Both the position numbers and the translations under genes were made by a program. A stretch of DNA of 15,920 nucleotides from Paraphysomonas bandaiensis. Lineage: Eukaryota; Protista; Chrysophyceae. The notes beneath the pieces are model-generated. The model made no database searches and was not told the DNA's origin. It was given only the letters and a program-made list of their open reading frames with translations. Shown piece by piece: positions 1-14,612 of the stretch (position 1 is the stretch's first letter; the number at the start of each line of letters is the position of its first letter). The stretch lies in NCBI GenBank assembly GCA_965644295.1, contig CBFFRP010000483.1, positions 1 through 15,920 on the forward strand, in the 5' to 3' direction.

Positions 1-462
1 TACAATGTTACATTAGACGAATTAAATAAAGTTTCTGAATCTTTACATTGGGTTCATGAATTAGATGAATATGATGATGGCCCTGATGTAGAATATAATA
101 TTAAAGATACAATTAAAAAACGTTGCAATCAAAGTGATAAACACAGTGATCAGTGTAATCAAAGTGATAAACACAGTGATCAGTGTAATCAAAGTGATAA
201 ACACAGTGATCAGTGTAATCAAAGTGATAAACACAGTGATCAGTGTAATCAAAGTGATAAACACAGTGATCAGTGTAATAATACTAATACTATTACAAGC
301 GCTATTAAAAAGCTTAGCTATAAAAAAAGCAATGAAACAGACGAAGATACAGATGAAGATACAGATGAAGATACAGATGAAGATGATGATGAAGATGAAA
401 CACCCCGTGCAAGTCACGAGACAGTGAAAAACATAATGAAAACTTTTAATATAAATATTTAA
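1..462 (+). CDS. 5'-partial hypothetical protein (C-terminus) with a 10-aa tandem repeat and an acidic tract
   Basis: Frame 1 is open from base 1 to TAA 460-462: YNVTLDELNKVSESLHWVHELDEYDDGPDVEYNIKDTIKKRC(NQSDKHSDQC)x5 NNTNT...(TDED)x4...NINI*. It is missing from the ORF track because the start lies upstream of the window. Confidence 0.75.
   Translation, partial: YNVTLDELNKVSESLHWVHELDEYDDGPDVEYNIKDTIKKRCNQSDKHSDQCNQSDKHSDQCNQSDKHSDQCNQSDKHSDQCNQSDKHSDQCNNTNTITSAIKKLSYKKSNETDEDTDEDTDEDTDEDDDEDETPRASHETVKNIMKTFNINI
127..276 (+). repeat. 30-bp coding tandem repeat, 5 perfect copies
   Basis: AATCAAAGTGATAAACACAGTGATCAGTGT at 127, 157, 187, 217 and 247. Confidence 0.97.
337..399 (+). repeat. 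12-bp coding repeat ACAGATGAAGAT (TDED) x4 plus GAT/GAA run
   Basis: Direct reading; the first copy has one mismatch. Confidence 0.9.
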
Positions 463-490
463 AAAATTAATATATAAATATATATTAATG
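456..490 (+). promoter_or_regulatory. Conserved upstream motif TATTTAAAAAATTAATATATA-n-TATATATTA-ATG (copy 1)
   Basis: Near-identical to 744-777; both copies end at an ORF start codon. Confidence 0.65.
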
Positions 491-742
491 AGAGATAAAT
501 TTATAGTAGAAATATATGATAATAATAATAATCTGATTACATCACAAAACTTTACATCCTATAAGGCAATAGCTCAGGAATACGATATACAATATTCAGA
601 AGCTAGAAAACTTAATGCTTTATGTGAGTCACGTACAACATGTAAATACTTACATCCATCATTAAAGCGACTGATTAACAGAATAAAAATTTATGATATT
701 AATAATATAGATAGTTATAATATTAAAAAAATAAAAATTTAA
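488..742 (+). CDS. Small putative DNA-binding protein with a NUMOD1/IENR1-like helix-turn-helix pattern
   Basis: VEIYDNNNNLITSQNFTSYKAIAQEYDI resembles the NUMOD1 pattern V-x-x-YD-x-x-GN-L-I-x-x-F-x-S-x-x-x-A by eye. The conserved motif precedes it. Confidence 0.6.
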   Translation: MRDKFIVEIYDNNNNLITSQNFTSYKAIAQEYDIQYSEARKLNALCESRTTCKYLHPSLKRLINRIKIYDINNIDSYNIKKIKI

Positions 743-743
743 T

Positions 744-777
744 TATTTAAAAAATTAATATATAGTATATATTAATG
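744..777 (+). promoter_or_regulatory. Conserved upstream motif (copy 2)
   Basis: TATTTAAAAAATTAATATATAGTATATATTAATG ending at ATG 775. Confidence 0.65.
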
Positions 778-1110
778 GACAAATATAAATTTTATAAGAT
801 TGATGAGAAGGACTTTAAAAACTCAGTTGAAATTACGACTAGATTTAGACACAGAAAGAAAGGGAAAGAATTAGATGTACCCGATATGCACTTTTTATAT
901 AATATGGTTGAGGAAAATCTTCCCGAAGACGCAAATATAATGGTTAGAGCGTTAAACGGTCACAGATACTTTACATTTAAAGGGTATACTAGTTACCAGC
1001 TGAACGTTCAGGATTTTGATGACTATTATAAAAACTCAGTCAAGAATACTGAGAAATTTGAGAAGTTTGAATTTATTGATATAACTGTTTTCATGGACAA
1101 GGAAAAATAA
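775..1110 (+). CDS. Hypothetical 111-aa virus-like protein
   Basis: Clean ATG-TAA ORF in AT-rich DNA with globular composition, preceded by the conserved motif. Confidence 0.75.
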   Translation: MDKYKFYKIDEKDFKNSVEITTRFRHRKKGKELDVPDMHFLYNMVEENLPEDANIMVRALNGHRYFTFKGYTSYQLNVQDFDDYYKNSVKNTEKFEKFEFIDITVFMDKEK

Positions 1111-1935
1111 ATAATTAAAAAATTAAAAAATTAAATATTTAAAAAATAATATAGTTGGAGTATGAGCTCCGTCGCTTCTCTTCATTCCTCTTCATTCCAT
1201 TATGTACTGCGTACTTGCGTACTTCCACACTGTCCATAGGTACGATCATGTAGGTACATGTACGGTTACACATTGTACATAGGTACGATGATGCGTGCAT
1301 ACGTACGATGGTATCAGTTACACGTACGATGGTTGAGTTTGTGTCTAGATAGTTCATTCTACATCTCACTTAATTATAATATATATAATTATGTTCGATT
1401 GCTTCCTCTCGCTAGCACATCACTTGTTGACTTGGTAGCGGATGATTCCGTTTTACCTTCCTTTCTTTCACTATGGCTTGTTGCTTCTTATACAGCCAAT
1501 ATCACGTAACGTATTCATTGACCCGTTAACGTTCTTTTATACGGTTGTCTCGGTTTGTTGTTGACGTTCGTGTGAAGCATTTTTGATTCAGCAGCCTCTG
1601 TGCATGCTTCTATATGCTTCTATGTGGATATCTATACATATACCACTTCTATATATGAAATTAAGGAGATGACAGTGTATATACTAATGCACATGATACA
1701 TACATATACAGTGATATACATACATATACAGTGATATATACATACATATACAGTACTATACATGCATATACAGTGATATACATACATATACAGTGATATA
1801 CATACATATACAGTGATATACATACATATACAGTGATATACATACATATACAGTGATATACATACATATACAGTGATATACATACATATACAGTGCTAAG
1901 AGGGCTCATGTGATGTCATTGTTGTTGTTTTATAG

Positions 1936-2034
1936 TATGGTCGTACAGCTCTTCTCTTGGCTGCCTCTGGAGGTCACAGAGATACATGTGAATATCTCAT
2001 AAGCAAAGGAGCAGATATCACTATAGGAGGCAGA
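1936..2034 (+). CDS. Ankyrin exon 1: YGRTALLLAASGGHRDTCEYLISKGADITIGGR
   Basis: TATAG| 99 nt |GTAAGT; matches the ankyrin consensus G-x-T-A/P-L-H-x-A-A-x-x-G-H...L-x-x-G-A-D. Confidence 0.92.
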
Positions 2035-5000
2035 GTAAGTAACCCCCCTATACATACATATACAGTGATATACGTACATATACAGTGATATACATACATA
2101 TACAGTGCTAAGAGGGCTCATGTGATGTCATTGTTATTGTTTTATAGGATGGTTCTACAGCTCTTCACGAGGCTGCCTCTAATGGTCACAGAGATACATG
2201 TGAATATCTCATCAGCGAAGGAGCAGATATCACTATAGGAGACAATGTAAGTAACCCCTCTATACATACATATACAGTGATATACATACATATACAGTGA
2301 TATACATGCATATACAGTGATATACATACATATACAGTGCTAAGATATTTTTTATAGGATGGTTCTACAGCTCTTCACAAGGCTGCCTCTGGAGGTCACA
2401 GAGATACATGTGAATATCTCATCAGCGAAGGAGCAGATATCACTATAAGAGACGATGTAAGTAACCCCCCTATACATACATATACAGTGATATACATGCA
2501 TATACAGTGCGAAGAGGGCTCATGTGATGTCATTGTTGTTGTTTTATAGGATGGTTGGACAGCTCTTCACTATGCTGCTCGTAAAGGTCACAGAGATACA
2601 TGTGAATATCTCATCAGCAAAGGAGCAGATATCACTATAAGAGACACTGTAAGTAACCCCCCTATACATACATATACAGTGATATACATGCATATACAGT
2701 GATATACATACATATACAGTGATATACATACATATACAGTGATATACATACATATACAGTGATATACATACATATACAGTGCTAAGAGGGCTCATGTGAT
2801 GTCATTGTTGTTGGTTTATAGAGGGGTTCTACAGCTCTTCACTATGCTGCTCGTAAAGGTCACAGAGATACATGTGAATATCTCATCAGCAAAGGAGCAG
2901 ATATCACTATAAGAGACAATGTAAGTAACCCCCCTATACATACATATACAGTGATATACATACATATACAGTGATATACATGCATATGCAGTGCTAAGAG
3001 GGCTCATGTGATGTCATTGTTGTTGGTTTATAGAGGGGTTGGACAGCTCTTCACGAGGCTGCCTCTGGAGGTCACAGAGATACATGTGAATATCTCATCA
3101 GCAAAGGAGCAGATATCACTATAGGAGACACTGTAAGTAACCCCCGTATACATACATATACAGTGATATACATACATATACAGTGATATACATACATATA
3201 CAGTGATATACATGCATATACAGTGATATACATACATATACAGTGCTAAGAGGGCTCATGTGATGTTATTGTTGTTGTTTTATAGGATGGTTCTACAGCT
3301 CTTCACGAGGCTGCCTCTGGAGGTCACAGAGATACATGTGAATATCTCATCAGGGAAGGAGCAGATGTCACTATAAGAAACGATGTAAGTAACCCCCCTA
3401 TACATACATATACAGTGATATACATACATATACAGTGATATACATACATATACAGTGATATACATACATATACAGTGATATACATACATATACAGTGATA
3501 TACATGCATATACATACACAGTGCTAAGAGGTCATATATAAGTATGCGTATTTTTTGTACTTCACTGACTCATCATGTGAAGACGGTATCTAGATATGAA
3601 TATGCGACGATGCACAGTGCCGCTTCTTTATGATGCTTATTGTTTTGCAGGATGGAGAGACTCCTGTGGACTCGGCAGAAGATGATGAGACGCGTAATGT
3701 CATCAGAAGGGCACATGTTAGTATGCGTGCTGTATGCTTGTTTCTTGTTCGTAGACCCAGAGAGATGACCTCATTGGACCATATGTGCATTGTATAGGCT
3801 GAGAGACAGAGACGGAGGCAGCAAGAGGAGGAGGAAGCTGCTGCAGAGGTATGTGTGTGATGATGATGTGGTTCTATGGTATGATATGTTTGTGTGCCCT
3901 TGACTGCGACCATATATGTATGTGTATAGTTGGCACAGCTGTTAAGGTGAGTAGCACCCACTTATATATGTGCTCAAGCTTCTATATGTGCCACAGAAGC
4001 TGCATTCGAACGAGGTGTTCATATGGCTGCGGAAAATATTTGCCGGTATGACTACAGCATCAACTCCCTTATTCTGATGTCGTTACTCATAGTATTTTTG
4101 CACACATATATTATATGTACTATTATAGGCAGGTGTATATATATGTGCAGTTATATTATGTATACAAGAAGTAACATATAATACTGCTGTGATCACTTGT
4201 AGGCACAAGCATTGACGCCAAGTCGGTGTTCGACAAATTGACAGAAGCACACTTTGATAGCATGGCCATCATTGGGGATAGTGCTAAATATTTGATGGAG
4301 AATAATGGTAGCGAGCTTAAAGTGATGGGCATAACGAACTTGGCTGTCCGTGTCCGACTCATGACGGGCTTAAAAGAGCTTTGCCCTCCCCCCCTGTCTC
4401 CGCCCTCTCCGGTATCCTCTCCTACCTCCCTTTATCGTGTGTCGTCGGGTGAAATTATTGAGAATATACAGCCATTGACTGCGACATCAGCAAGGAGAGG
4501 AGTGTGTATTGGTAACCTTCTGGGTGGCATGTTCTCTGGTAACTTCGTCCATAAAAACTTATACGGTCAATTCGAGAAACATGAAGTCATCATCAAGACC
4601 AATGGACGACAACGAGACTTGCAGCGGGAGTTGCAAAACTTTGCCCTGCTGTTGAAAGCAGGAACAGCCACAGGGTGTGTGCATGTGTACGGGGGTTGTG
4701 GAGAGGGACTTTGCCAGTATATTGTAATGGAGCGCCTCGAGTTTGATTTACGCGTCGTAATAGACCAAGACTACGCCTGGGCAAAGTACGACTGGGTGAA
4801 TCAGTTGGTTTTGGCCTTAAAGGAATTGCATGCATGTGGTTTATGCCACCTGGACCTCAAACCTGCTAATGTGTTGATCGGAGGCAACCAATTGAAATTC
4901 TGTGATTTGGATTGTTCTAGAAGGTTTCGCTGTGTGAATGACCTTGATGGGCCAGAGCTGTGTCGCTGCGATGACAGCACCCCCCCTAAGCTGATATTCT

Positions 5001-6455
5001 CTCAGCCATGGGTGAGTCCCGATGTTTATAACGGCAGTCCAGGTTTGCTCGTAGCCGACCCTGCCATTGATATATTTACTGCCGGGCTGCTGGTGGCGGC
5101 ACTGCTGAATAAAACCGACCCACGACGGCAGGATGTGCTCCCATGGCAAGAGGAGGCGCTCTTAACTAGAGCACTTTCATCCGATGAAACATACCTGAGA
5201 GGTTTACTCGCAGCCAAGATGAAAGGCATCAACAGGGGGTACGTCGACATGGTATTTGCAATGTGCAGGTTCAACCCTGCCGAGAGACCCACGGCTGCTG
5301 AGGTGGTGGACCAGATTGCGGATCTAGGATTCACTCGAGCCCATCGCAAAGACCAAGAGACACTTCATCACGTTCAAAGGGAGAATAAGTTCTTGCGACA
5401 TGATGTGATAGAGCGACTGTCTTCCCTACATGAGCAGTGGGCGGAGTCCATTCAGTCGGTGATTGCGAACAACAATCAATTTCAGCAGAAAATTGAGCAA
5501 TTTGAAGATAAGCGCTCGAGAATGCAAGCTGAGGATGCAGCTCGGGCGGAGGCGACTCAACAAAGCATTATCCAATTGACCGATGCGATGAGAGATATGC
5601 AGGGAAACCCGTCGTTAGTAGGTGCCCTGGATGCACTCTCTGCACAAATGGACTCTCTACACAATAGCCTCGCACAGTTGTTGAGAGGCACTCACACCAT
5701 CCCCACCCTCATGATTGTCCTTCCTGAAATCAAAGATCAATCGATGACGGGATATCTGCGCAGAGGGGTAACTCGAGTTTTCACTCAGAAGTACACCCTC
5801 TTCTTCCTCTGCAGCCACACCCGCGGCATCGCCCCTTGTGGGCCAAATGGAAAAGGTGATGAGGACTATAATATATACATGTGCATGCTTGTTGGTGCTG
5901 GTTATATATATATACATATATACGTTATTACATACGTGTTTGTCTGTGTGACATGTTACATATTACACATGTGTCTGAACTCTGTGCTGTAAAGGCTACC
6001 CTATCAAAGTCTATCGGGAGTGGCTAATAAAAGCCGGTCCTGTGCTGAAGCTCGGTCTAGTGCTCCTGAAGCTCGCCCTGTCATTAGTGGGGGGCATCCC
6101 TCTACCAGGTGTGATTGAGGCTTTGGGCACTGACCTGGATGTCCACAAGCGCTATGTGGATAAGGCGCTCTCTCTGGTCAACATGCCAGATAAGATAGAG
6201 GAGATTACGGAAGAGAAACTGGATAGTGTGGTGGATGCAGAGGACCCTACTGAGATGCTGAAGCAGATCGATGCCTCCACCGAGGACAGCAGACTGGCGT
6301 ATGAAACCATTAGGGAGTTACTGGAGAAAAGAGAGGGATACAACATAGCCACGACCTGTGGTCTGCGGCAAGTGGTGTGTCGCAATGGCAAGTGCGGGTG
6401 GGTCCTCAACAAGGACGACGTGCAGAAGGCATATGAAGACGCCAACAGTTTTTAA
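1936..6455 (+). CDS. Spliced gene: ankyrin repeats (7 + cap) - SAM - protein kinase - coiled coil - hydrophobic C-terminal domain; about 990 aa, start codon not identified
   Basis: Exon model, all introns GT-AG and frame-consistent: 1936-2034, 2148-2246, 2358-2456, 2550-2648, 2822-2920, 3034-3132, 3286-3384, 3651-3716, 3798-3848, 3997-4045, 4203-5855, 5995-6455. It joins ORF-track entries 4226.. and 6042.. in frame. Confidence 0.8.
2148..2246 (+). CDS. Ankyrin exon 2: DGSTALHEAASNGHRDTCEYLISEGADITIGDN
   Basis: TATAG| 99 nt |GTAAGT. Confidence 0.93.
2358..2456 (+). CDS. Ankyrin exon 3: DGSTALHKAASGGHRDTCEYLISEGADITIRDD
   Basis: TATAG| 99 nt |GTAAGT. Confidence 0.93.
2550..2648 (+). CDS. Ankyrin exon 4: DGWTALHYAARKGHRDTCEYLISKGADITIRDT
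   Basis: TATAG| 99 nt |GTAAGT. Confidence 0.93.
2822..2920 (+). CDS. Ankyrin exon 5: RGSTALHYAARKGHRDTCEYLISKGADITIRDN
   Basis: TATAG| 99 nt |GTAAGT. Confidence 0.93.
3034..3132 (+). CDS. Ankyrin exon 6: RGWTALHEAASGGHRDTCEYLISKGADITIGDT
   Basis: TATAG| 99 nt |GTAAGT. Confidence 0.93.
3286..3384 (+). CDS. Ankyrin exon 7: DGSTALHEAASGGHRDTCEYLIREGADVTIRND
   Basis: TATAG| 99 nt |GTAAGT. Confidence 0.93.
3651..3716 (+). CDS. Ankyrin C-cap exon: DGETPVDSAEDDETRNVIRRAH
   Basis: TTTTGCAG| ... |GTTAGT, phase 0; G-x-T-P-x-D-x-A capping pattern. Confidence 0.85.
3798..3848 (+). CDS. Charged helical linker exon: AERQRRRQQEEEEAAAE
   Basis: TATAG| ... |GTATGT, phase 0. Confidence 0.75.
3997..4045 (+). 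CDS. Exon encoding the start of a SAM domain: KLHSNEVFIWLRKIFA(G)
   Basis: CACAG| ... G|GTATGA. EVxxWL matches SAM helix 1, and phase 1 fits the acceptor at 4202/4203. Confidence 0.65.
4203..5855 (+). CDS. Large exon: rest of SAM domain, Pro/Ser linker, protein kinase domain, coiled coil, start of C-terminal domain
   Basis: SAM-like ELKVMGITNLAVRVRLMTGLKEL. Kinase motifs VIIK, RELQN, IVME, HLDLKPANVL, KFCDLD, WVSPD, DIFTAG and NPAERPTA. Q/E-rich heptads at about 5400-5690. Confidence 0.88.
5995..6455 (+). CDS. Last exon of the ANK-SAM-kinase gene
   Basis: The AAG| acceptor in phase 1 gives PCGPNGK-G-YPIKVYREWLIKAGPVLKLGLVLLKLALSLVGGIPLPG..., in frame with ORF 6042..6455. Confidence 0.8.
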
Positions 6456-6827
6456 GTAGTGCGTGGCAATACACATACCACCGCCGTGAAGATAATACAT
6501 ACATGTAGCTGTTATCTGTTGTGTGTACGAATAACTTGTGTCTTGTGTAAGTGTGTTCGACAGTCAGTGAACCTACTAGTATGGGAGGGTTTGCGTTGTG
6601 CTCTGTTCCCCATCAGTGCATCATCCAACACAACATGTGTATATTCTGTCAACTTTTGTCATATTTGGATGGTGAAATAACGTTACGCAGACAATAGTCA
6701 ATCAGTAAATTATAATCAATATATGTCTCATCATTCGTTGGTATTAATAACTATTGTTCTTAATTGTACACAGTACTGAGTGAATTATTCTAGGAGAGTT
6801 ATAGTAAAATTGAGATGTTGTATGTTG

Positions 6828-7016
6828 TGTTGAGATCTGAAGATTCTATATACTTGCAATTGAGTGCAGTATTATGTGAGATGCAAGGATCGAAAGATAT
6901 ATATGTAATTAGTACATTATATTGTGTAGTATGAAACTGAAGTAGAAGTGGGTGACTATACAGGATACGATCACTGAGTGTGTGGTTTGTACACTATAGT
7001 AGTAAATGAATGGTGT
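6828..7016 (+). repeat. 5' LTR (189 bp, lacking the last 6 nt)
   Basis: Identical by eye to 9451-9639; starts TGTTG. Confidence 0.93.
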
Positions 7017-9326
7017 AGGGAAGGACTGGGAGGACAAAGCAATGACAGGTTATTTCATAGGGTATCCAGCTGATCGAAAAGGATACAAGGTGCTAGTGGG
7101 GGACACCGTAGTACACTCTGTACACGTATTATTTGATGAATCGGTACCTGAGAGGTCTCAGGATTATTATAGAGAGCTGGAGGAGGCTCAAGTGGCTATA
7201 GATCCCGAGGCTCGTCAACCGGGTGAGTTTGAGTATCTTATCGGAAAGCACCATGAGGATGGTGGTCTGCTATACAAGACTAACAGAGTGGTGATAAGGA
7301 AGGGACTTATTGTGGGATACCGGTCGTTGGTTACTGGTAACCAGGTTCAAGTGGAGGATAAAACTCCTATTCATATTGCTGACATCAAGAAGATGACAGA
7401 GGATCTTGCGCAGAGGGTGGTTAGGGCCAGAGTTACTGACAACCGTGACGGCGGTATCAGCGGAGTGGTGCCACAGCAGTCGGAAAGTGGGCAGGTGCAG
7501 CCCCAGGCTGACTCAGCATTACCTTCGGGGGAAGGGACCCCTGCCGAGAATCATCCGCACGGCAAACGCGCAAGAACTCCAAGGACGGTAACGAATGTGT
7601 CGGTGTTAGGACAAATCCATCATTTGAGTGATGAGAGTGATGTGAGTGACCTTTTACAGGAGGCAGACTCAGTGTGGATGTCAGCGGAAGAGTCGACAGT
7701 GCCTCAGACACATCGTGAGTCCTTGGAGAGTGCCGAGCACAGGGAGTGGAGACGAGCTCGCCGTGTAGAGCGAGAGGGTTTGGCGAAGCGAGATACTATG
7801 GAGGTGACTCGTATACCGGACGGAGTCGTCCCACTGCACTCCAAGTACGTCTATGGAAAGAAGTACGATAAGGAGGGAGAGGTCCGCCGATATAAGGCTC
7901 GTCTTGTAGCAATCGGTTGTGGACAGCAGTCGAGTGGTTGGGCGAACCATTTCGCACCCGTTGTTAAGGGGGTAACAGTGCGACTGTTAATCGCCATAGC
8001 TTTCGTGATGAACATGGTAATTCATCAACTGGATGTGTCTAACGCATTTCTATATGCAGATATAGAGGGGGACGTATATATGAAGGCAACTCCGGACTTT
8101 CAGCTGCCTGAGGGGTACTGCTTTAAGCTGAAGAAGTCGTTATACGGGCTTCGGAGTTCCCCGCGGTCGTGGTGGAAAACATTGGATAAATTCATACGAT
8201 CTATGCATTTTAAACCATGTGTATTAGACCCGTGTTTGTATTATCAGTATAAGGGCGATGAATTGATATTATTAACGATATATGTGGATGATATCCTAGT
8301 GTTAGGTCGTGATGTCAACATGGTGAAGGATATTAAAGCTCAACTGTGTGCCCGGTTTGATATGAAGGATATGGGCGAGATGGAACATTTTCTGAATGTT
8401 CGAGTCACAAGAGAACGCCAGAGTATATTCGTCTTGACCAATCAGTATATGCGGCTAAGATCTTAGAAAAGTTTGAAAAGTATCTTGGGCCACCGCGAAA
8501 GGTACGGAAGAGTCCTCTACCGGCGGAAGCAATGGATTTAGTGGCAAAAGGGGCGCGGCATGAGCATACCGAGGAGGAACAGCTTATAGTAGATAACTTC
8601 CCATATCGGCCGCTGATAGGTGCATTACTATATCTATCGATGAACACGAGGCCGGATATTGCCTATGCAGTGGGAGTACTGTCTCGGTTCAGTAATAAGG
8701 TGAATATTGAAGTATGCAAGCTATTAACACACGTATGGCAATATATTCGTGGTTCTGTTGACAAAGGGATTCAATATGGGAGTAGACGGTTCGACTTCCA
8801 TATGTTTACTGACGCGGATTGGGCGGGAGACCAGCTCTCCAGGAAGTCCACGTCGGGGTACGTTGGGTTTGCAGCGGGAGGGCCTATAGTCTGGCAGTCC
8901 AAACTGCAGACGACAGTGGCAACGACAAGCATGCAGTCTGAGTATCAGTGTATTTACTCGGGTCTCCAAGAAGTGCTATGGGTTCGGGGGGTGACGGGTG
9001 AGATTAAGTTGAGGCTCATCAAACCCACACCATTCTTCATCGACAGTCAGAGTGCCCAGGATTTGGCCGAAAACCCAGTGTTTCACAAGAAGTCGAAGCA
9101 CATTGAGATTAAGTATCACATGGTGAGAGAGCACGTGGATCCCAATCAGTTCAATACGATTAAGTTAGTGCATGTGCATACATCGCAACAAGCAGCAGAT
9201 ATTTATACAAAGTCATTGGTTGGATTATCATATATGGAGCAGAGAAAGAGAAATCTTGGAGAGAAAATTAAGAGTTCCACTGAAGTGATTAATGAGGGAC
9301 CAAGGGATAAAAGAAGACGCAAGTAG
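7006..9326 (+). pseudogene. pol: Copia pol remnant: post-integrase region, reverse transcriptase, RNase H; one frameshift at about 8411-8414
   Basis: GYFIGY/KGYKV/VLFDE; YKARLVA, QLDVSNAFL, LKKSLYGL, YVDDIL; TDADWAG, IDSQSA, KHIEIKYH, AADIYTK. Removing one GA from AAGAGAACG restores VTRTPEYIRLDQSVYAAKILEKF and joins ORFs 7006..8466 and 8532..9326. Confidence 0.92.
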
Positions 9327-9441
9327 GTACTGAGTTTTTTAGACAGAGGTTTAGACTTAGAGATGAGTCTATTTTACTGTCAAGAATTTTTTTATCTCAG
9401 GCATTCAATAGCTGGGAGGCGTCATAGTACAACACTCAATT

Positions 9442-9450
9442 GAGGGGGAG
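9442..9450 (+). promoter_or_regulatory. Polypurine tract GAGGGGGAG
   Basis: Immediately 5' of the TG that starts the 3' LTR. Confidence 0.9.
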
Positions 9451-9645
9451 TGTTGAGATCTGAAGATTCTATATACTTGCAATTGAGTGCAGTATTATGT
9501 GAGATGCAAGGATCGAAAGATATATATGTAATTAGTACATTATATTGTGTAGTATGAAACTGAAGTAGAAGTGGGTGACTATACAGGATACGATCACTGA
9601 GTGTGTGGTTTGTACACTATAGTAGTAAATGAATGGTGTTGAACA
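9451..9645 (+). repeat. 3' LTR (195 bp, TGTT...AACA)
   Basis: TG...CA ends with a short terminal inverted repeat, following the PPT. Confidence 0.93.
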
Positions 9646-10935: not shown

Positions 10936-10936
10936 T

Positions 10937-12688
10937 CTCGTCATATAGAACACAATGGACACGAGTCCTCATCACTCGCACCCCCATCGATAGCACTCCA
11001 TCTATCTCATGAGGAGATGCTCTCATCTTATAGAACACAATGGACACGAGTCCTCATCACTCGCACCCCCATCGATAGCACTCCATCTATCTCATGAGGA
11101 GATGCTCTCATCTTATAGAACACAATGGACACGAGTCCTCATCACTCGCACCCCCATCGATAGCACTCCATCTATCTCATGAGGAGATGCTCTCATCTTA
11201 TAGAACACAATGGACACGAGTCCTCATCACTCGCACCCCCATCGATAGCACTCCATCTATCTCATGAGGAGATGCTCTCATCTTATAGAACACAATGGAC
11301 ACGAGTCCTCATCACTCGCACCCCCATCGATAGCACTCCATCTATCTCATGAGGAGATGCTCTCATCTTATAGAACACAATGGACACGAGTCCTCATCAC
11401 TCGCACCCCCATCGATAGCACTCCATCTATCTCATGAGGAGATGCTCTCATCTTATAGAACACAATGGACACGAGTCCTCATCACTCGCACCCCCATCGA
11501 TAGCACTCCATCTATCTCATGAGGAGATGCTCTCATCTTATAGAACACAATGGACACGAGTCCTCATCACTCGCACCCCCATCGATAGCACTCCATCTAT
11601 CTCATGAGGAGATGCTCTCATCTTATAGAACACAATGGACACGAGTCCTCATCACTCGCACCCCCATCGATAGCACTCCATCTATCTCATGAGGAGATGC
11701 TCTCATCTTATAGAACACAATGGACACGAGTCCTCATCACTCGCACCCCCATCGATAGCACTCCATCTATCTCATGAGGAGATGCTCTCATCTTATAGAA
11801 CACAATGGACACGAGTCCTCATCACTCGCACCCCCATCGATAGCACTCCATCTATCTCATGAGGAGATGCTCTCATCTTATAGAACACAATGGACACGAG
11901 TCCTCATCACTCGCACCCCCATCGATAGCACTCCATCTATCTCATGAGGAGATGCTCTCATCTTATAGAACACAATGGACACGAGTCCTCATCACTCGCA
12001 CCCCCATCGATAGCACTCCATCTATCTCATGAGGAGATGCTCTCATCTTATAGAACACAATGGACACGAGTCCTCATCACTCGCACCCCCATCGATAGCA
12101 CTCCATCTATCTCATGAGGAGATGCTCTCATCTTATAGAACACAATGGACACGAGTCCTCATCACTCGCACCCCCATCGATAGCACTCCATCTATCTCAT
12201 GAGGAGATGCTCTCATCTTATAGAACACAATGGACACGAGTCCTCATCACTCGCACCCCCATCGATAGCACTCCATCTATCTCATGAACTACTCTCGTCA
12301 TATAGAACACAATGGACACGAGTCCTCATCACTCGCACCCCCATCGATAGCACTCCATCTATCTCATGAGGAGATGCTCTCATCTTATAGAACACAATGG
12401 ACACGAGTCCTCATCACTCGCACCCCCATCGATAGCACTCCATCTATCTCATGAACTACTCTCGTCATATAGAACACAATGGACACGAGTCCTCATCACT
12501 CGCACCCCCATCGATAGCACTCCATCTATCTCATGAGGAGATGCTCTCATCTTATAGAACACAATGGACACGAGTCCTCATCACTCGCACCCCCATCGAT
12601 AGCACTCCATCTATCTCATGAACTGCTCTCGTCATATAGAACACAATGGACACGAGTCCTCATCACTCGCACCCCCATCGATAGCACT
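10937..12688. repeat. 85-bp tandem satellite, about 20.6 units
   Basis: Unit TAGAACACAATGGACACGAGTCCTCATCACTCGCACCCCCATCGATAGCACTCCATCTATCTCATGAGGAGATGCTCTCATCTTA from 10946. Fifteen identical copies are followed by 82-bp variants at 12221, 12388 and 12555 alternating with 85-bp units. Confidence 0.97.
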
Positions 12689-14003: not shown

Positions 14004-14530
14004 CTACTGTACTCTCCAGTAACCGTCATAATTCCAATATCTTAGAATTACAGAGATAAAAGAACCCACCGGAACGTCTTCAGTATCCAACTCCTTTCCC
14101 AAAACTTCCTGAGAAACTGAATATACAACACCAGTCCATATGTGAAGATTAGCTCCCGTCTCATCACGGCCAATGGCAAACAAATTGTCCCCAATAGATG
14201 CCCTCGCCACTGACTCTTCACTCACGTTAATGAAGCATGTCAACTTTAGGTCAGGATAAGCAGACGCATTCAATATTCCAATGTCGACATACGCATGCTG
14301 TAATTCTTCGCTTTCAAAATGTCCAGCTGAGGCGTTAAGACATACTTCACTCCTTCATCTAGTGCACCAAACACAGTGACAGAATTCTTCAACTTCATAA
14401 CACAAGAAGGCGACATTTTGGAGACAGATTTGTTTACAGACAGATGAGTTTCGTCTCTCATTAATGAGGAAAGCTCAACAGCCACCGCTTCTACTATAGA
14501 AGCATCTGTAGAAGCATCTGAAGGCCGCAT
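14004..14530 (-). pseudogene. Frameshifted coding remnant, weakly trypsin-like serine protease-like
   Basis: Two abutting ORFs. Upstream extension gives HAYVDIGIL...SIGDNLFAIG...WTGVV, loosely like D-I-A-I-L...G-x-x-V-x-A-I-G...G-x-V. No catalytic His or GxSG motif is seen. Confidence 0.3.
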
Positions 14531-14612
14531 GAGAGCATCTATAGCTAAAAGGCCTATCTAGCTATAGATGCTCTCACACGGCGTCCAGACGCTTCTACAG
14601 ATGCTTCTATAG
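14494..14612. repeat. Long inverted repeat, 54-bp arms (49/54 matched), 11-nt loop
   Basis: 14494-14547 is the reverse complement of 14559-14612 with 5 mismatches. Confidence 0.92.

What the first reader, a model, noticed from the sequence alone, without database searches (positions are those of the whole stretch)
1936..3384. Natural DARPin-like cassette array: one ankyrin repeat per exon, hypervariable only at binding-surface positions
Seen: seven exons of exactly 99 nt, all with phase-0 introns, so any exon can be added, lost, skipped or swapped without breaking frame. The scaffold (TAL, GHRDTCEYLI, GAD) is almost invariant at the DNA level; I see only two synonymous variant sites. Exon codons 1 (Y/D/R), 3 (R/S/W), 8 (L/E/K/Y), 11-12 (SG/SN/RK), 31 (G/R) and 33 (R/N/D/T) vary, often by whole-codon changes. 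Established: these are the beta-hairpin and helix-1 residues that form the ankyrin binding surface, largely the positions randomised in DARPin libraries. One-repeat-per-exon shuffling is known for LRR-ROCO and NB-ARC-TPR genes of the brown alga Ectocarpus. Inference: this is a diversifying ankyrin sensor module, a candidate variable immune receptor system in a protist.
Basis: partly seen in the sequence, partly recalled or inferred. Interest (0 to 1): 0.92.

Follow-up and report, generated by a model that had tools for sequence, protein, structure and literature searches.

The report
Hypervariable one-exon-per-repeat ankyrin cassette array
A silica-forming marine alga (probably a diatom) builds the ankyrin binding domain of a kinase gene from near-identical 99-base exons that differ almost only at target-contact residues and are reshuffled between gene copies, a fast-diversifying receptor design known in principle from fungi and brown algae; its function is untested.

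Summary
Seven 99-nt, phase-0, AG/GT-bounded exons (1936-3384) each encode exactly one Pfam ankyrin repeat. The introns are near-identical and carry a 20-nt minisatellite.

Variation sits in nine codons (1, 3, 8, 11, 12, 24, 31, 32, 33). These include all seven positions randomised in DARPin libraries. In 41 unique exons of the close subfamily, pN at these codons is 0.39 against a scaffold pS of 0.056. Whole-exon pN/pS is 2.05 (bootstrap 1.69-2.61).

The family has at least 281 such exons genome-wide, 139 of them in the close subfamily. Three gene copies share a 98.6-99.6% identical kinase half but carry unrelated arrays of 7, at least 7 and 5 repeats. Spliced contigs confirm the exon junctions.

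New here:
- The window copy lacks the family's N-cap/ATG exon and abuts repeat DNA, so it may be truncated.
- A kinase-less array of at least 32 exons ends directly in a TTAGGG telomere.
- A 51-nt coiled-coil exon is a second variable-number cassette.

Diversifying evolution is supported. An immune role is only inferred. The principle is known from fungal NLR repeats and Ectocarpus exon cassettes. This scan had already reported the same family on other pieces of this genome.

The parts
1141..1695 (+). Repeat-family DNA that bounds the array on its 5' side. There is no N-cap/ATG exon here. A 45-nt end motif (1650-1695) recurs in at least 15 places in the genome.
1696..1935 (+). The 3' part of an intron: a 20-nt minisatellite (unit ATACATACATATACAGTGAT, about 10 copies) followed by the stereotyped acceptor end.
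1936..2034 (+). Ankyrin cassette exon 1 (99 nt, phase 0). It carries L in place of the TALH histidine.
2148..2246 (+). Ankyrin cassette exon 2
2358..2456 (+). Ankyrin cassette exon 3
2550..2648 (+). Ankyrin cassette exon 4. It is identical to six exons of the telomere-adjacent array on contig C508.
2822..2920 (+). Ankyrin cassette exon 5
3034..3132 (+). Ankyrin cassette exon 6
3286..3384 (+). Ankyrin cassette exon 7, the last full repeat (GADV type).
2035..3285 (+). Six stereotyped introns lying between the cassette exons within this span (lengths 93-173 nt). Each has a fixed GTAAGTAACCCC 5' end, 2-6 copies of the 20-nt minisatellite, and one of two fixed 3' ends.
3651..3716 (+). C-terminal half-repeat (cap) exon, 66 nt, phase 0.
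3798..3848 (+). Coiled-coil cassette exon, 51 nt (AERQRRRQQEEEEAAAE). There is 1 copy here, 6 on C640 and at least 10 on C124.
3997..4045 (+). Exon carrying the start of the SAM-like region.
4203..5855 (+). Large exon carrying the SAM-like region, the protein kinase domain (HLD, non-RD), a coiled coil and the start of a conserved unannotated C-terminal domain.
5995..6455 (+). Last exon: the rest of the C-terminal domain and the stop codon.

Best explanation
The seven exons are the variable ligand-binding module of a cytosolic receptor-like kinase family in a silicifying marine alga. A complete paralogue (C124) shows the full architecture: an N-cap exon, n ankyrin cassette exons, a cap half-repeat, n coiled-coil cassette exons, a SAM-like region, a non-RD protein kinase, a coiled coil and an unannotated conserved C-terminal domain.

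Each 99-nt phase-0 exon encodes one ankyrin repeat. Nearly all differences between cassettes fall on the beta-hairpin tip and inner-helix residues that line the concave ankyrin face.

Inferred mechanism of diversification, in the germline over evolutionary time:
- Unequal crossing-over in the near-identical, minisatellite-bearing introns adds and removes cassettes without breaking the frame.
- Short-tract gene conversion inside exons reassorts a limited set of whole-codon alleles.
- Cassettes are exchanged among at least 139 close copies on several contigs, including a kinase-less array at a chromosome end.
- Selection keeps the scaffold uniform and keeps the surface diverse.

Inferred function: the array binds variable ligands. 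These are most plausibly molecules of other organisms such as viruses, parasites or conspecifics. The signal would pass on through SAM-like/coiled-coil oligomerisation and the kinase.

The copy in this window lacks the family's start/N-cap exon, so it may be a 5'-truncated or interrupted member.
For: Anatomy:
- Seven 99-nt phase-0 exons, each one full Pfam Ank unit.
- The exon aligns in register to DARPin repeats.

Focused variation, from 59 exons (41 unique) of the close subfamily:
- Entropy is 0.88-2.35 bits at codons 1, 3, 8, 11, 12, 24, 31, 32 and 33, and at most 0.57 bits elsewhere.
- pN at these nine codons is 0.39, scaffold pS is 0.056 and scaffold pN is 0.019.
- Whole-exon pN/pS is 2.05 (bootstrap 1.69-2.61). 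pN(hv)/pS(scaffold) is 7.0 (5.4-10.0).
- Intron flanks have pi of 0.044 and at most 0.118.
- There are 0 stops among 531 hypervariable codons, although 266 of them are one step from a stop.
- 76 unique exons of more distant arrays show the same hot codons, with hv pN/pS of 2.14.

Reassortment: all four gametes occur between every adjacent pair of hot codons (Rm = 8 within 99 nt), and 41 exons give 37 surface haplotypes.

Turnover:
- The kinase halves of C483, C640 and C124 are 99.57% and 98.64% identical over 2.6-2.8 kb.
- Their arrays have 7, at least 7 and 5 exons. The nearest exon in C640 or C124 differs by 4-13 nt per 99.

Transcription and splicing: cDNA-like contigs of run X14 join 3132|3286, 3716|3798, 3848|3997, 4045|4203 and 5855|5995. 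A metatranscriptome contig (X15) also joins 5855|5995.

Kinase: PF00069, E = 7e-17. The HLD, KPAN and DLD motifs are present.

Family size: 281 and 139 exons.
Against: - No functional or ligand data exist, and no expression link to infection.
- The window copy has no N-cap/ATG exon (tblastn finds one before 15 other arrays but not here). It abuts repeat-family DNA, so it may be non-functional.
- The RNA contigs cannot be assigned to this copy rather than to its 99%-identical paralogues. Run X14 is only a presumed RNA run.
- The pN/pS values are simple Nei-Gojobori proportions on recombining, non-independent exons, not a recombination-aware site model.
- Some diversity could be old variation kept while conversion homogenises the rest.
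- The SAM assignment is below the Pfam cut-off (E = 0.13).
- The C-terminal domain remains unidentified.
- About two-thirds of the 139 close exons lie on two small contigs. One of them (C526) is palindromic and may be an assembly artefact.
Confidence: 0.6

Rival explanations
1. This is an ordinary scaffold or adaptor ankyrin protein under concerted evolution. Tandem exons are homogenised by conversion, and the surface positions merely drift because they are unconstrained. There is no selection for diversity and no receptor role.
For: - In all ankyrin proteins the same positions are the least conserved, so the location of the variation alone is not diagnostic (established knowledge; compare the consensus).
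- In the more distant arrays whole-exon pN/pS is only 1.09 (0.98-1.23).
Against: - Unconstrained sites should not exceed the neutral rate. pN at the nine codons is 7 times the scaffold pS and 3-9 times the intron-flank diversity.
- Neutral conversion would homogenise hot codons together with their 6-30-nt neighbours.
- No stop codon has appeared among 531 hot codons, half of which are one step from a stop.
- Arrays differ completely between gene copies whose remainder is 99% identical.
Confidence: 0.15
2. The copy in this window is a dead or dying member. Its array was cut off from its N-cap/start exon by insertion of repeat DNA, so the seven exons are a relic or a passive cassette store rather than an expressed sensor. 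This is compatible with the family-level reading above.
For: - The conserved 31-codon N-cap exon with ATG precedes arrays in 15 other loci but is absent from the window.
- 1141-1695 is multi-copy DNA whose 45-nt end motif occurs in at least 15 places.
- 1-1140 is a multi-copy AT-rich element.
- The C374/C640 copy is likewise bounded upstream by a Copia copy.
- The C508 array has lost its kinase half to a telomere.
Against: - All seven exons, the cap, the kinase and the C-terminal exons are open, with canonical splice sites.
- The copy is 99.6% identical to C640, so any disruption is very recent.
- The contig starts 1.7 kb upstream, so further exons could lie beyond the insertion.
- An ATG followed by a GT donor exists at 1669-1676, but this is untested.
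Confidence: 0.35
3. The array is an assembly artefact: a collapsed or chimeric representation of a repeat, so that exon number and order are not real.
For: - The family sits on many short contigs (5-16 kb) that end inside arrays.
- C526 is an inverted, palindromic array typical of fold-back read artefacts.
- C640 and C374 overlap by 1.57 kb.
Against: - The seven window exons and their six introns are all mutually distinct. They are flanked on the 3' side by unique gene sequence within one contig.
- Independent DNA runs cover 3034-6500.
- Exon-exon junction contigs exist in cDNA-like data.
Confidence: 0.04

Closest known systems
Fungal NLR (STAND) proteins with highly internally conserved ANK, TPR or WD repeats (Podospora HNWD/het-e/het-d; Paoletti 2007; Dyrka et al. 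2014, PMC4986451)
   Same: - Near-identical tandem repeats.
- Repeat-number polymorphism.
- Concerted evolution with repeat reshuffling within and between loci.
- Positive selection at a few positions that map to the concave ANK face (inner helix and beta-hairpin).
   Different: - The fungal repeats are not split one per exon.
- They sit C-terminal to a NACHT/NB-ARC domain. Here the array is N-terminal to a SAM-like region and a kinase, with no NOD domain.
- The host here is a silicifying alga, and the introns carry a minisatellite.
Ectocarpus LRR-ROCO and NB-ARC-TPR exon-cassette genes (Zambounis et al. 2012, PMC3341825; 2024 follow-up PMC11378527)
   Same: - One repeat per phase-0 exon of constant length.
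- Exon shuffling and duplication.
- Positive selection on ligand-contact residues.
- Stramenopile host.
- Proposed but untested immune role.
   Different: - The repeat type is ankyrin (99 nt), not LRR or TPR.
- The signalling part is a kinase, not Roc-COR or NB-ARC.
- The C-terminal domain gives only a weak structural lead to ROCO proteins (TM 0.45).
Designed ankyrin repeat proteins (DARPin libraries; Binz et al. 2003, from my own knowledge; PDB chains)
   Same: - A constant consensus framework with diversity at repeat positions 2, 3, 5, 13, 14, 33 and 26. These correspond to exon codons 33, 1, 3, 11, 12, 31 and 24, all of which are among the nine hot codons.
   Different: - DARPins are man-made.
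- The natural array also varies at positions 10 and 1 (exon codons 8 and 32).
- The natural array uses a restricted, reassorted set of codon alleles rather than random codons.
Ankyrin-SAM-enzyme architectures such as tankyrase (ANK clusters, SAM, PARP), and vertebrate ANK1-3 genes with 99-nt repeat exons (my own knowledge; tankyrase chain 5jhq appears)
   Same: - An ANK binding array followed by an oligomerising SAM and a catalytic domain.
- One repeat per 99-nt exon is not unique to this gene.
   Different: - Those repeats are old, divergent at all sites and conserved between orthologues.
- They show no cassette turnover or surface-focused hypervariability.

Membership tests
Ankyrin repeat (Pfam PF00023, clan Ank) | A 33-residue helix-turn-helix-hairpin repeat that matches the profile above its curated cut-off. 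| tested here: met
   exons at 1936, 2550 and 3286 score 33.6-46.8 bits (cut-off 21.1) over profile positions 1-30 up to 1-33 of 33; the exon at 2148 aligns to DARPin and natural ANK chains.
Fungal-type 'high internal conservation' repeat receptors (Dyrka 2014) | More than 85% identity between tandem repeats over at least 100 residues. | tested here: met
   24 of 33 codons are essentially invariant, and scaffold pN is 0.019. Identity between whole repeats in this array is around or just below the 85% line, because 5-9 of 33 residues differ.
Fungal-type 'high internal conservation' repeat receptors (Dyrka 2014) | Repeat-number polymorphism and positive selection at binding-face positions. | tested here: met
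   (7, at least 7 and 5 repeats on copies with 99% identical kinase halves). (pN/pS). This compares paralogues or haplotigs, not named strains.
Fungal-type 'high internal conservation' repeat receptors (Dyrka 2014) | A central NACHT or NB-ARC (STAND) NTPase domain. | tested here: not met
   only Pkinase is found in the 588-aa ORF, and nothing in the last exon; no NOD domain in any exon.
Ectocarpus-type exon-cassette receptors (ROCO / NB-ARC-TPR) | One repeat per phase-0 exon of constant length, in runs. | tested here: met
   59 of 60 close-subfamily units are canonical.
Ectocarpus-type exon-cassette receptors (ROCO / NB-ARC-TPR) | A Roc-COR GTPase or NB-ARC signalling core. | tested here: not met
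   No Pfam Roc, COR or NB-ARC match. There is only a weak shape match of the C-terminal domain model (pLDDT 63) to ROCO proteins, TM 0.45.
Non-RD protein kinases (Dardick and Ronald 2006, my own knowledge) | An eukaryotic protein kinase domain whose catalytic-loop HRD arginine is replaced. | tested here: met
   (PF00069, 62 bits); the catalytic loop reads C-H-L-D-L-K-P-A-N, with the beta-3 lysine in VIIK and the metal-binding D in DLD.
SAM domain (PF07647/PF00536) | Profile match above the cut-off. | tested here: inconclusive
   SAM_2 gives E = 0.13 and 12.9 bits (cut-off 20.5) on the exon-11 part alone. The first 16 residues lie in exon 10 and were not joined.
Somatically assembled cassette receptors (lamprey VLR type) | The expressed gene differs from the germline by copy-choice insertion of flanking cassettes in somatic cells. 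| not testable with these tools
   This needs single-cell or clonal-lineage long reads. Only assembly contigs and Logan contigs were available.

The most novel reading that the evidence does not exclude
The family works as a cassette-exchange system rather than just a fast-evolving gene family. Kinase-less archives of dozens of intact ankyrin exons at chromosome ends (C508 ends in a telomere 83 nt after its last exon) would donate short conversion tracts to the few expressed kinase-linked arrays at high frequency, possibly within clonal lineages. The intronic 20-nt minisatellite would act as the recombination substrate. This would give a unicellular alga a receptor repertoire that changes on ecological time scales. 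It would be analogous in logic to subtelomeric antigenic-variation archives or to chicken Ig pseudo-V conversion, but used for recognition.
Probability: 0.07. Interest if true: 0.92.

Novelty: new variant of a known kind. Interest (0 to 1): 0.62.

Why it matters
Diatoms and their relatives suffer heavy mortality from viruses, chytrids and oomycete-like parasites. Yet no variable recognition receptors are known for them.

This family combines several features of receptors under arms-race selection:
- a consensus-like ankyrin scaffold;
- surface-focused hypervariability;
- frame-neutral exon cassettes;
- fine-scale allele reassortment;
- rapid array turnover next to an almost unchanged kinase.

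It gives a concrete, testable candidate for non-self or partner recognition in a major phytoplankton group. It also extends the 'highly conserved repeat with hypervariable face' strategy, known from fungal NLRs and brown-algal ROCO/NB-ARC genes, to a third repeat type and exon architecture with a kinase output.

The natural cassette alleles are also a ready-made, evolution-tested diversity set for ankyrin binder engineering.

Tried and rejected
As the tool suggested, I laid a part with fewer copies, 3034-6500.
- Exon skipping: junction contigs such as 3132|3651 carry letters that differ from the window (a GACAAT exon end, cap variants). They may come from paralogues or strain alleles, so I make no claim.
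C526, C585, C567 and C327 could not be read, only located.
- The search for homologous proteins with the 550-aa kinase exon gave one weak hit, because full-length relatives exceed its length band.
- The Atlas feature search gave only generic kinases.
- The listing of cluster members gave no organism names.
- C-terminal domain: there is no Pfam family. The AlphaFold model of a stand-alone homologue reached only pLDDT 63. Foldseek against the PDB found nothing. The Atlas gave only TM 0.45 to ROCO proteins. It is left as 'conserved, unannotated'.
- The AT-rich upstream ORF has no relative in IMG/VR.
- Paper searches found no description of this family in diatoms.
No model of the ankyrin solenoid was made, and the surface mapping rests on single-exon alignment to DARPin chains.
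- No complex prediction was run.
Full report
**What is in the sequence.**

The window is a whole 15,920-nt contig (C483) of a 62.5-Mb, 669-contig assembly. Between 1936 and 3384 lie seven exons of exactly 99 nt. Each is preceded by TAG and followed by GTAAGT, and all are open in the same frame. The six introns between them are 93-173 nt long. Each has a fixed 5' end, 2-6 copies of a 20-nt minisatellite, and one of two fixed 3' ends.

Each exon is one complete Pfam ankyrin repeat, covering profile positions 1-33 of 33 at 33.6-46.8 bits against a cut-off of 21.1.
- Only two purely synonymous variant sites exist in the seven exons, at codons 10 and 22.
- Codons 1, 3, 8, 11, 12, 31 and 33 vary by whole-codon changes.

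**The gene around it.**

Contigs of two runs, laid on 3034-6500, give the downstream model. Run X14 has no depth in the introns and behaves as cDNA. Run X15 is a marine metatranscriptome.

| Part | Coordinates | Content |
|---|---|---|
| Cap exon | 3651-3716 | half-repeat |
| Coiled-coil exon | 3798-3848 | 51 nt |
| Exon 10 | 3997-4045 | start of SAM-like region |
| Exon 11 | 4203-5855 | SAM-like region, kinase, coiled coil, start of C-terminal domain |
| Last exon | 5995-6455 | rest of C-terminal domain, stop |

- The large exon holds a weak SAM-like match (E = 0.13, below cut-off).
- It also holds a protein kinase domain (PF00069, E = 7e-17). Its catalytic loop reads HLD rather than HRD, a non-RD kinase. 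The beta-3 lysine, the KPAN asparagine and a DLD metal-binding aspartate are all present.
- A coiled coil follows, and then the first part of a conserved C-terminal domain.
- That domain exists as stand-alone proteins and behind many other kinases. It has no Pfam family. Its AlphaFold model was poor (pLDDT 63). It has no PDB match and only a weak shape match to ROCO proteins (TM 0.45). I leave it unidentified.

No model of the whole ankyrin solenoid was therefore made.

**A large family.**

A degenerate pattern for the scaffold GHRD..EYLI hits 281 places in the genome and none in the reversed control. The exact core of this subfamily, allowing up to 2 mismatches, hits 139 places.
- I found 60 units of the close subfamily. 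Of these, 59 have an open frame and canonical AG/GT borders.
- I found 83 exons of more distant arrays.

The genome carries several silicon-transporter genes above the Pfam cut-off. Its telomeres are TTAGGG. The host is therefore a silicifying alga, most likely a diatom, as earlier notes of this scan also say. I could not name it.

**Is the variation focused, and is it more than neutral?**

In the 59 close exons, amino-acid entropy is 0.88-2.35 bits at codons 1, 3, 8, 11, 12, 24, 31, 32 and 33. It is at most 0.57 bits everywhere else, and twelve codons are invariant even at third positions. Common variants occupy 20 of 27 sites in the nine hot codons against 6 of 72 scaffold sites (Fisher p = 3e-10).

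Nei-Gojobori proportions for the 41 unique exons of the close subfamily:

| Measure | Value |
|---|---|
| pN at hot codons | 0.389 |
| pS in scaffold | 0.056 |
| pN in scaffold | 0.019 |
| Whole-exon pN/pS | 2.05 (bootstrap 1.69-2.61) |
| pN(hot)/pS(scaffold) | 7.0 (5.4-10.0) |

- Intron flanks are as quiet as synonymous sites. Diversity (pi) is 0.044 for the 5' 30 nt. It is at most 0.118 for the 3' 45 nt, a figure inflated by the short intron type. The low synonymous diversity is therefore not just an exonic-splicing constraint.
- None of the 531 hot codons is a stop, although 266 are one mutation from one.
- The 76 unique exons of distant arrays have the same hot codons, a hot-codon pN/pS of 2.14 and very uniform scaffold codon usage.

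These are simple statistics on recombining, related sequences. The effect is large, but a recombination-aware model is still needed.

**Do the hot codons form the binding face?**

A single exon aligns in register to DARPin and consensus-ankyrin chains, so that exon codon i equals repeat position i+2. The DARPin library positions are 2, 3, 5, 13, 14 and 33, plus the restricted position 26. These numbers come from my own knowledge of Binz et al. 2003. The aligned DARPin repeats visibly differ at the columns for codons 3, 11, 12, 24 and 31.

Those positions correspond to exon codons 33, 1, 3, 11, 12, 31 and 24, and all seven are among the nine hot codons. If nine of 33 codons were picked at random, the chance of including all seven is about 8e-6 (my arithmetic; the hot set was defined post hoc by the entropy gap). 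The two extra hot codons are positions 10 (inner helix) and 1.

**How the diversity is arranged.**

The hot codons carry a small set of multi-nucleotide alleles, for example TCT/TGG at codon 3 and TCT-GGA/CGT-AAA at codons 11-12. These occur in almost every combination:
- All four gametes are seen between every adjacent pair of hot codons. This gives a minimum of eight recombination intervals within 99 nt.
- The 41 unique exons give 37 surface haplotypes.

Multi-nucleotide alleles are unlikely to recur by mutation. Short-tract gene conversion or template switching between cassettes is therefore the best explanation.

**Turnover between gene copies.**

Only three intact copies of this kinase exist, on C483, C640 (which overlaps C374) and C124, plus a decayed one on C365. 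From the coiled-coil exon to beyond the stop codon, the window is 99.57% identical to C640 (9 mismatches in 2780 nt) and 98.64% identical to C124.

The arrays, in contrast, have 7, at least 7 and 5 exons and no collinearity. Every window exon differs from its nearest exon in C640 or C124 by 4-13 nt. The 51-nt coiled-coil exon is a second phase-0 cassette, present 1, 6 and at least 10 times. Junction contigs of coiled-coil exon to coiled-coil exon occur in X14. The array therefore evolves one to two orders of magnitude faster than the rest of the gene.

1. *No start exon in this copy.* A conserved 31-codon N-cap exon with the start codon precedes the arrays of 15 other loci. On C124 it completes the gene model. 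There is none in the window. Instead, 1141-1695 is multi-copy DNA whose 45-nt end motif occurs in at least 15 places, and 1-1140 is an AT-rich element with at least 12 copies. The C374/C640 array is likewise bounded upstream by a Copia copy that is 98.8% identical to the one at 7019-9422 of the window. The window copy may therefore be interrupted or 5'-truncated. The RNA evidence cannot be assigned to this copy rather than to its 99% paralogues.
2. *A telomere-adjacent array.* Contig C508 carries at least 32 intact cassette exons and no kinase. Eighty-three nucleotides after its last exon it runs into CCTAACCCTAA-CTATTCGA followed by 236 perfect TTAGGG repeats. This is a kinase-less archive at a chromosome end.
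3. *A possibly artefactual contig.* C526 holds about 60 more exons as an inverted pair of arrays and may be an assembly artefact.

**Comparison with what is known.**

Fungal NLRs carry ANK, TPR and WD repeats with high internal conservation, repeat-number polymorphism, concerted evolution with reshuffling, and positive selection on the concave ANK face (Dyrka et al. 2014). [quoted passage not shown] 2012).

The present family shares the evolutionary mode of the first and the exon architecture of the second. It has no NOD or Roc-COR domain, so it is a member of neither. Its output is a non-RD kinase behind a SAM-like region. One repeat per 99-nt exon is also known from vertebrate ankyrin genes (my own knowledge), so that feature alone is not new. 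I found no description of this family in diatoms.

Earlier follow-ups of this scan reached the same reading on other pieces of this genome. I treated them as leads and re-derived the statistics here.

**Verdict.**

- Diversifying, cassette-based evolution of an ankyrin binding face is well supported at the family level.
- An immune or other recognition role is a reasonable inference, not shown.
- The particular copy in the window may be truncated.
- Novelty: a new variant of a known kind.

Noticed in passing
L031 (contig C508) 8200-9797: The last ankyrin exon of a kinase-less array of at least 32 exons is followed, after 83 nt of intron, by CCTAACCCTAA, the octamer CTATTCGA and 236 perfect TTAGGG repeats. 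The array ends at a telomere, as if the gene was broken in an intron and healed.
   Followed up: partly
window 1-1140: An AT-rich (26-28% GC) stretch of short ORFs, each preceded by an AAAAATTAATATATA-like motif. It is present in at least 12 copies (81-90% identical) in the genome. It has no Pfam hit and no relative in IMG/VR. It may be an endogenous virus-like or mobile element.
   Followed up: partly
window 124-279: A perfect 30-nt x 5 tandem repeat inside an ORF of the AT-rich element, encoding the decapeptide NQSDKHSDQC five times.
   Followed up: no
window 1650-1695: A 45-nt motif ending in AATGCACATG, directly abutting the intron minisatellite, recurs at 93-98% identity in at least 15 genomic places. 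It looks like a transposon terminus. It contains an ATG followed two codons later by a GT donor that could serve as a makeshift first exon.
   Followed up: partly
window 6827-9639: A small Copia-type element with 190-nt, 100% identical LTRs (6827-7016 and 9450-9639) and an RT ORF (PF07727), lying about 370 nt after the gene's stop codon. A 98.8% identical copy lies just upstream of the paralogous array on C374/C640.
   Followed up: partly
window 10936-12688: An 85-nt tandem repeat, 20.7 copies, 97% matches, with strong negative GC skew (-0.36 to -0.41).
   Followed up: no
window 3798-3848; L033 and L034: The 51-nt coiled-coil exon (AERQRRRQQEEEEAAAE) is itself a phase-0 cassette with 1, 6 and at least 10 tandem copies in the three gene copies. 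It is repeated in many other family members as well.
   Followed up: partly
contig C526 (not fetched), about 1660-16700: About 29 forward cassette exons are followed, roughly 400 nt later, by about 30 reverse ones. This is either a palindromic array or a fold-back assembly artefact.
   Followed up: no
protein P0003 (ENA metagenome fragment): Its first 69 residues equal the SAM-like part of this gene. It then continues into an N/K/I-rich ORF whose end resembles UDP-galactopyranose mutase. This may be an AT-rich element inserted into another copy of the gene.
   Followed up: no
window 14494-14612: A 119-nt near-perfect palindrome (88% self-complementary).
   Followed up: no
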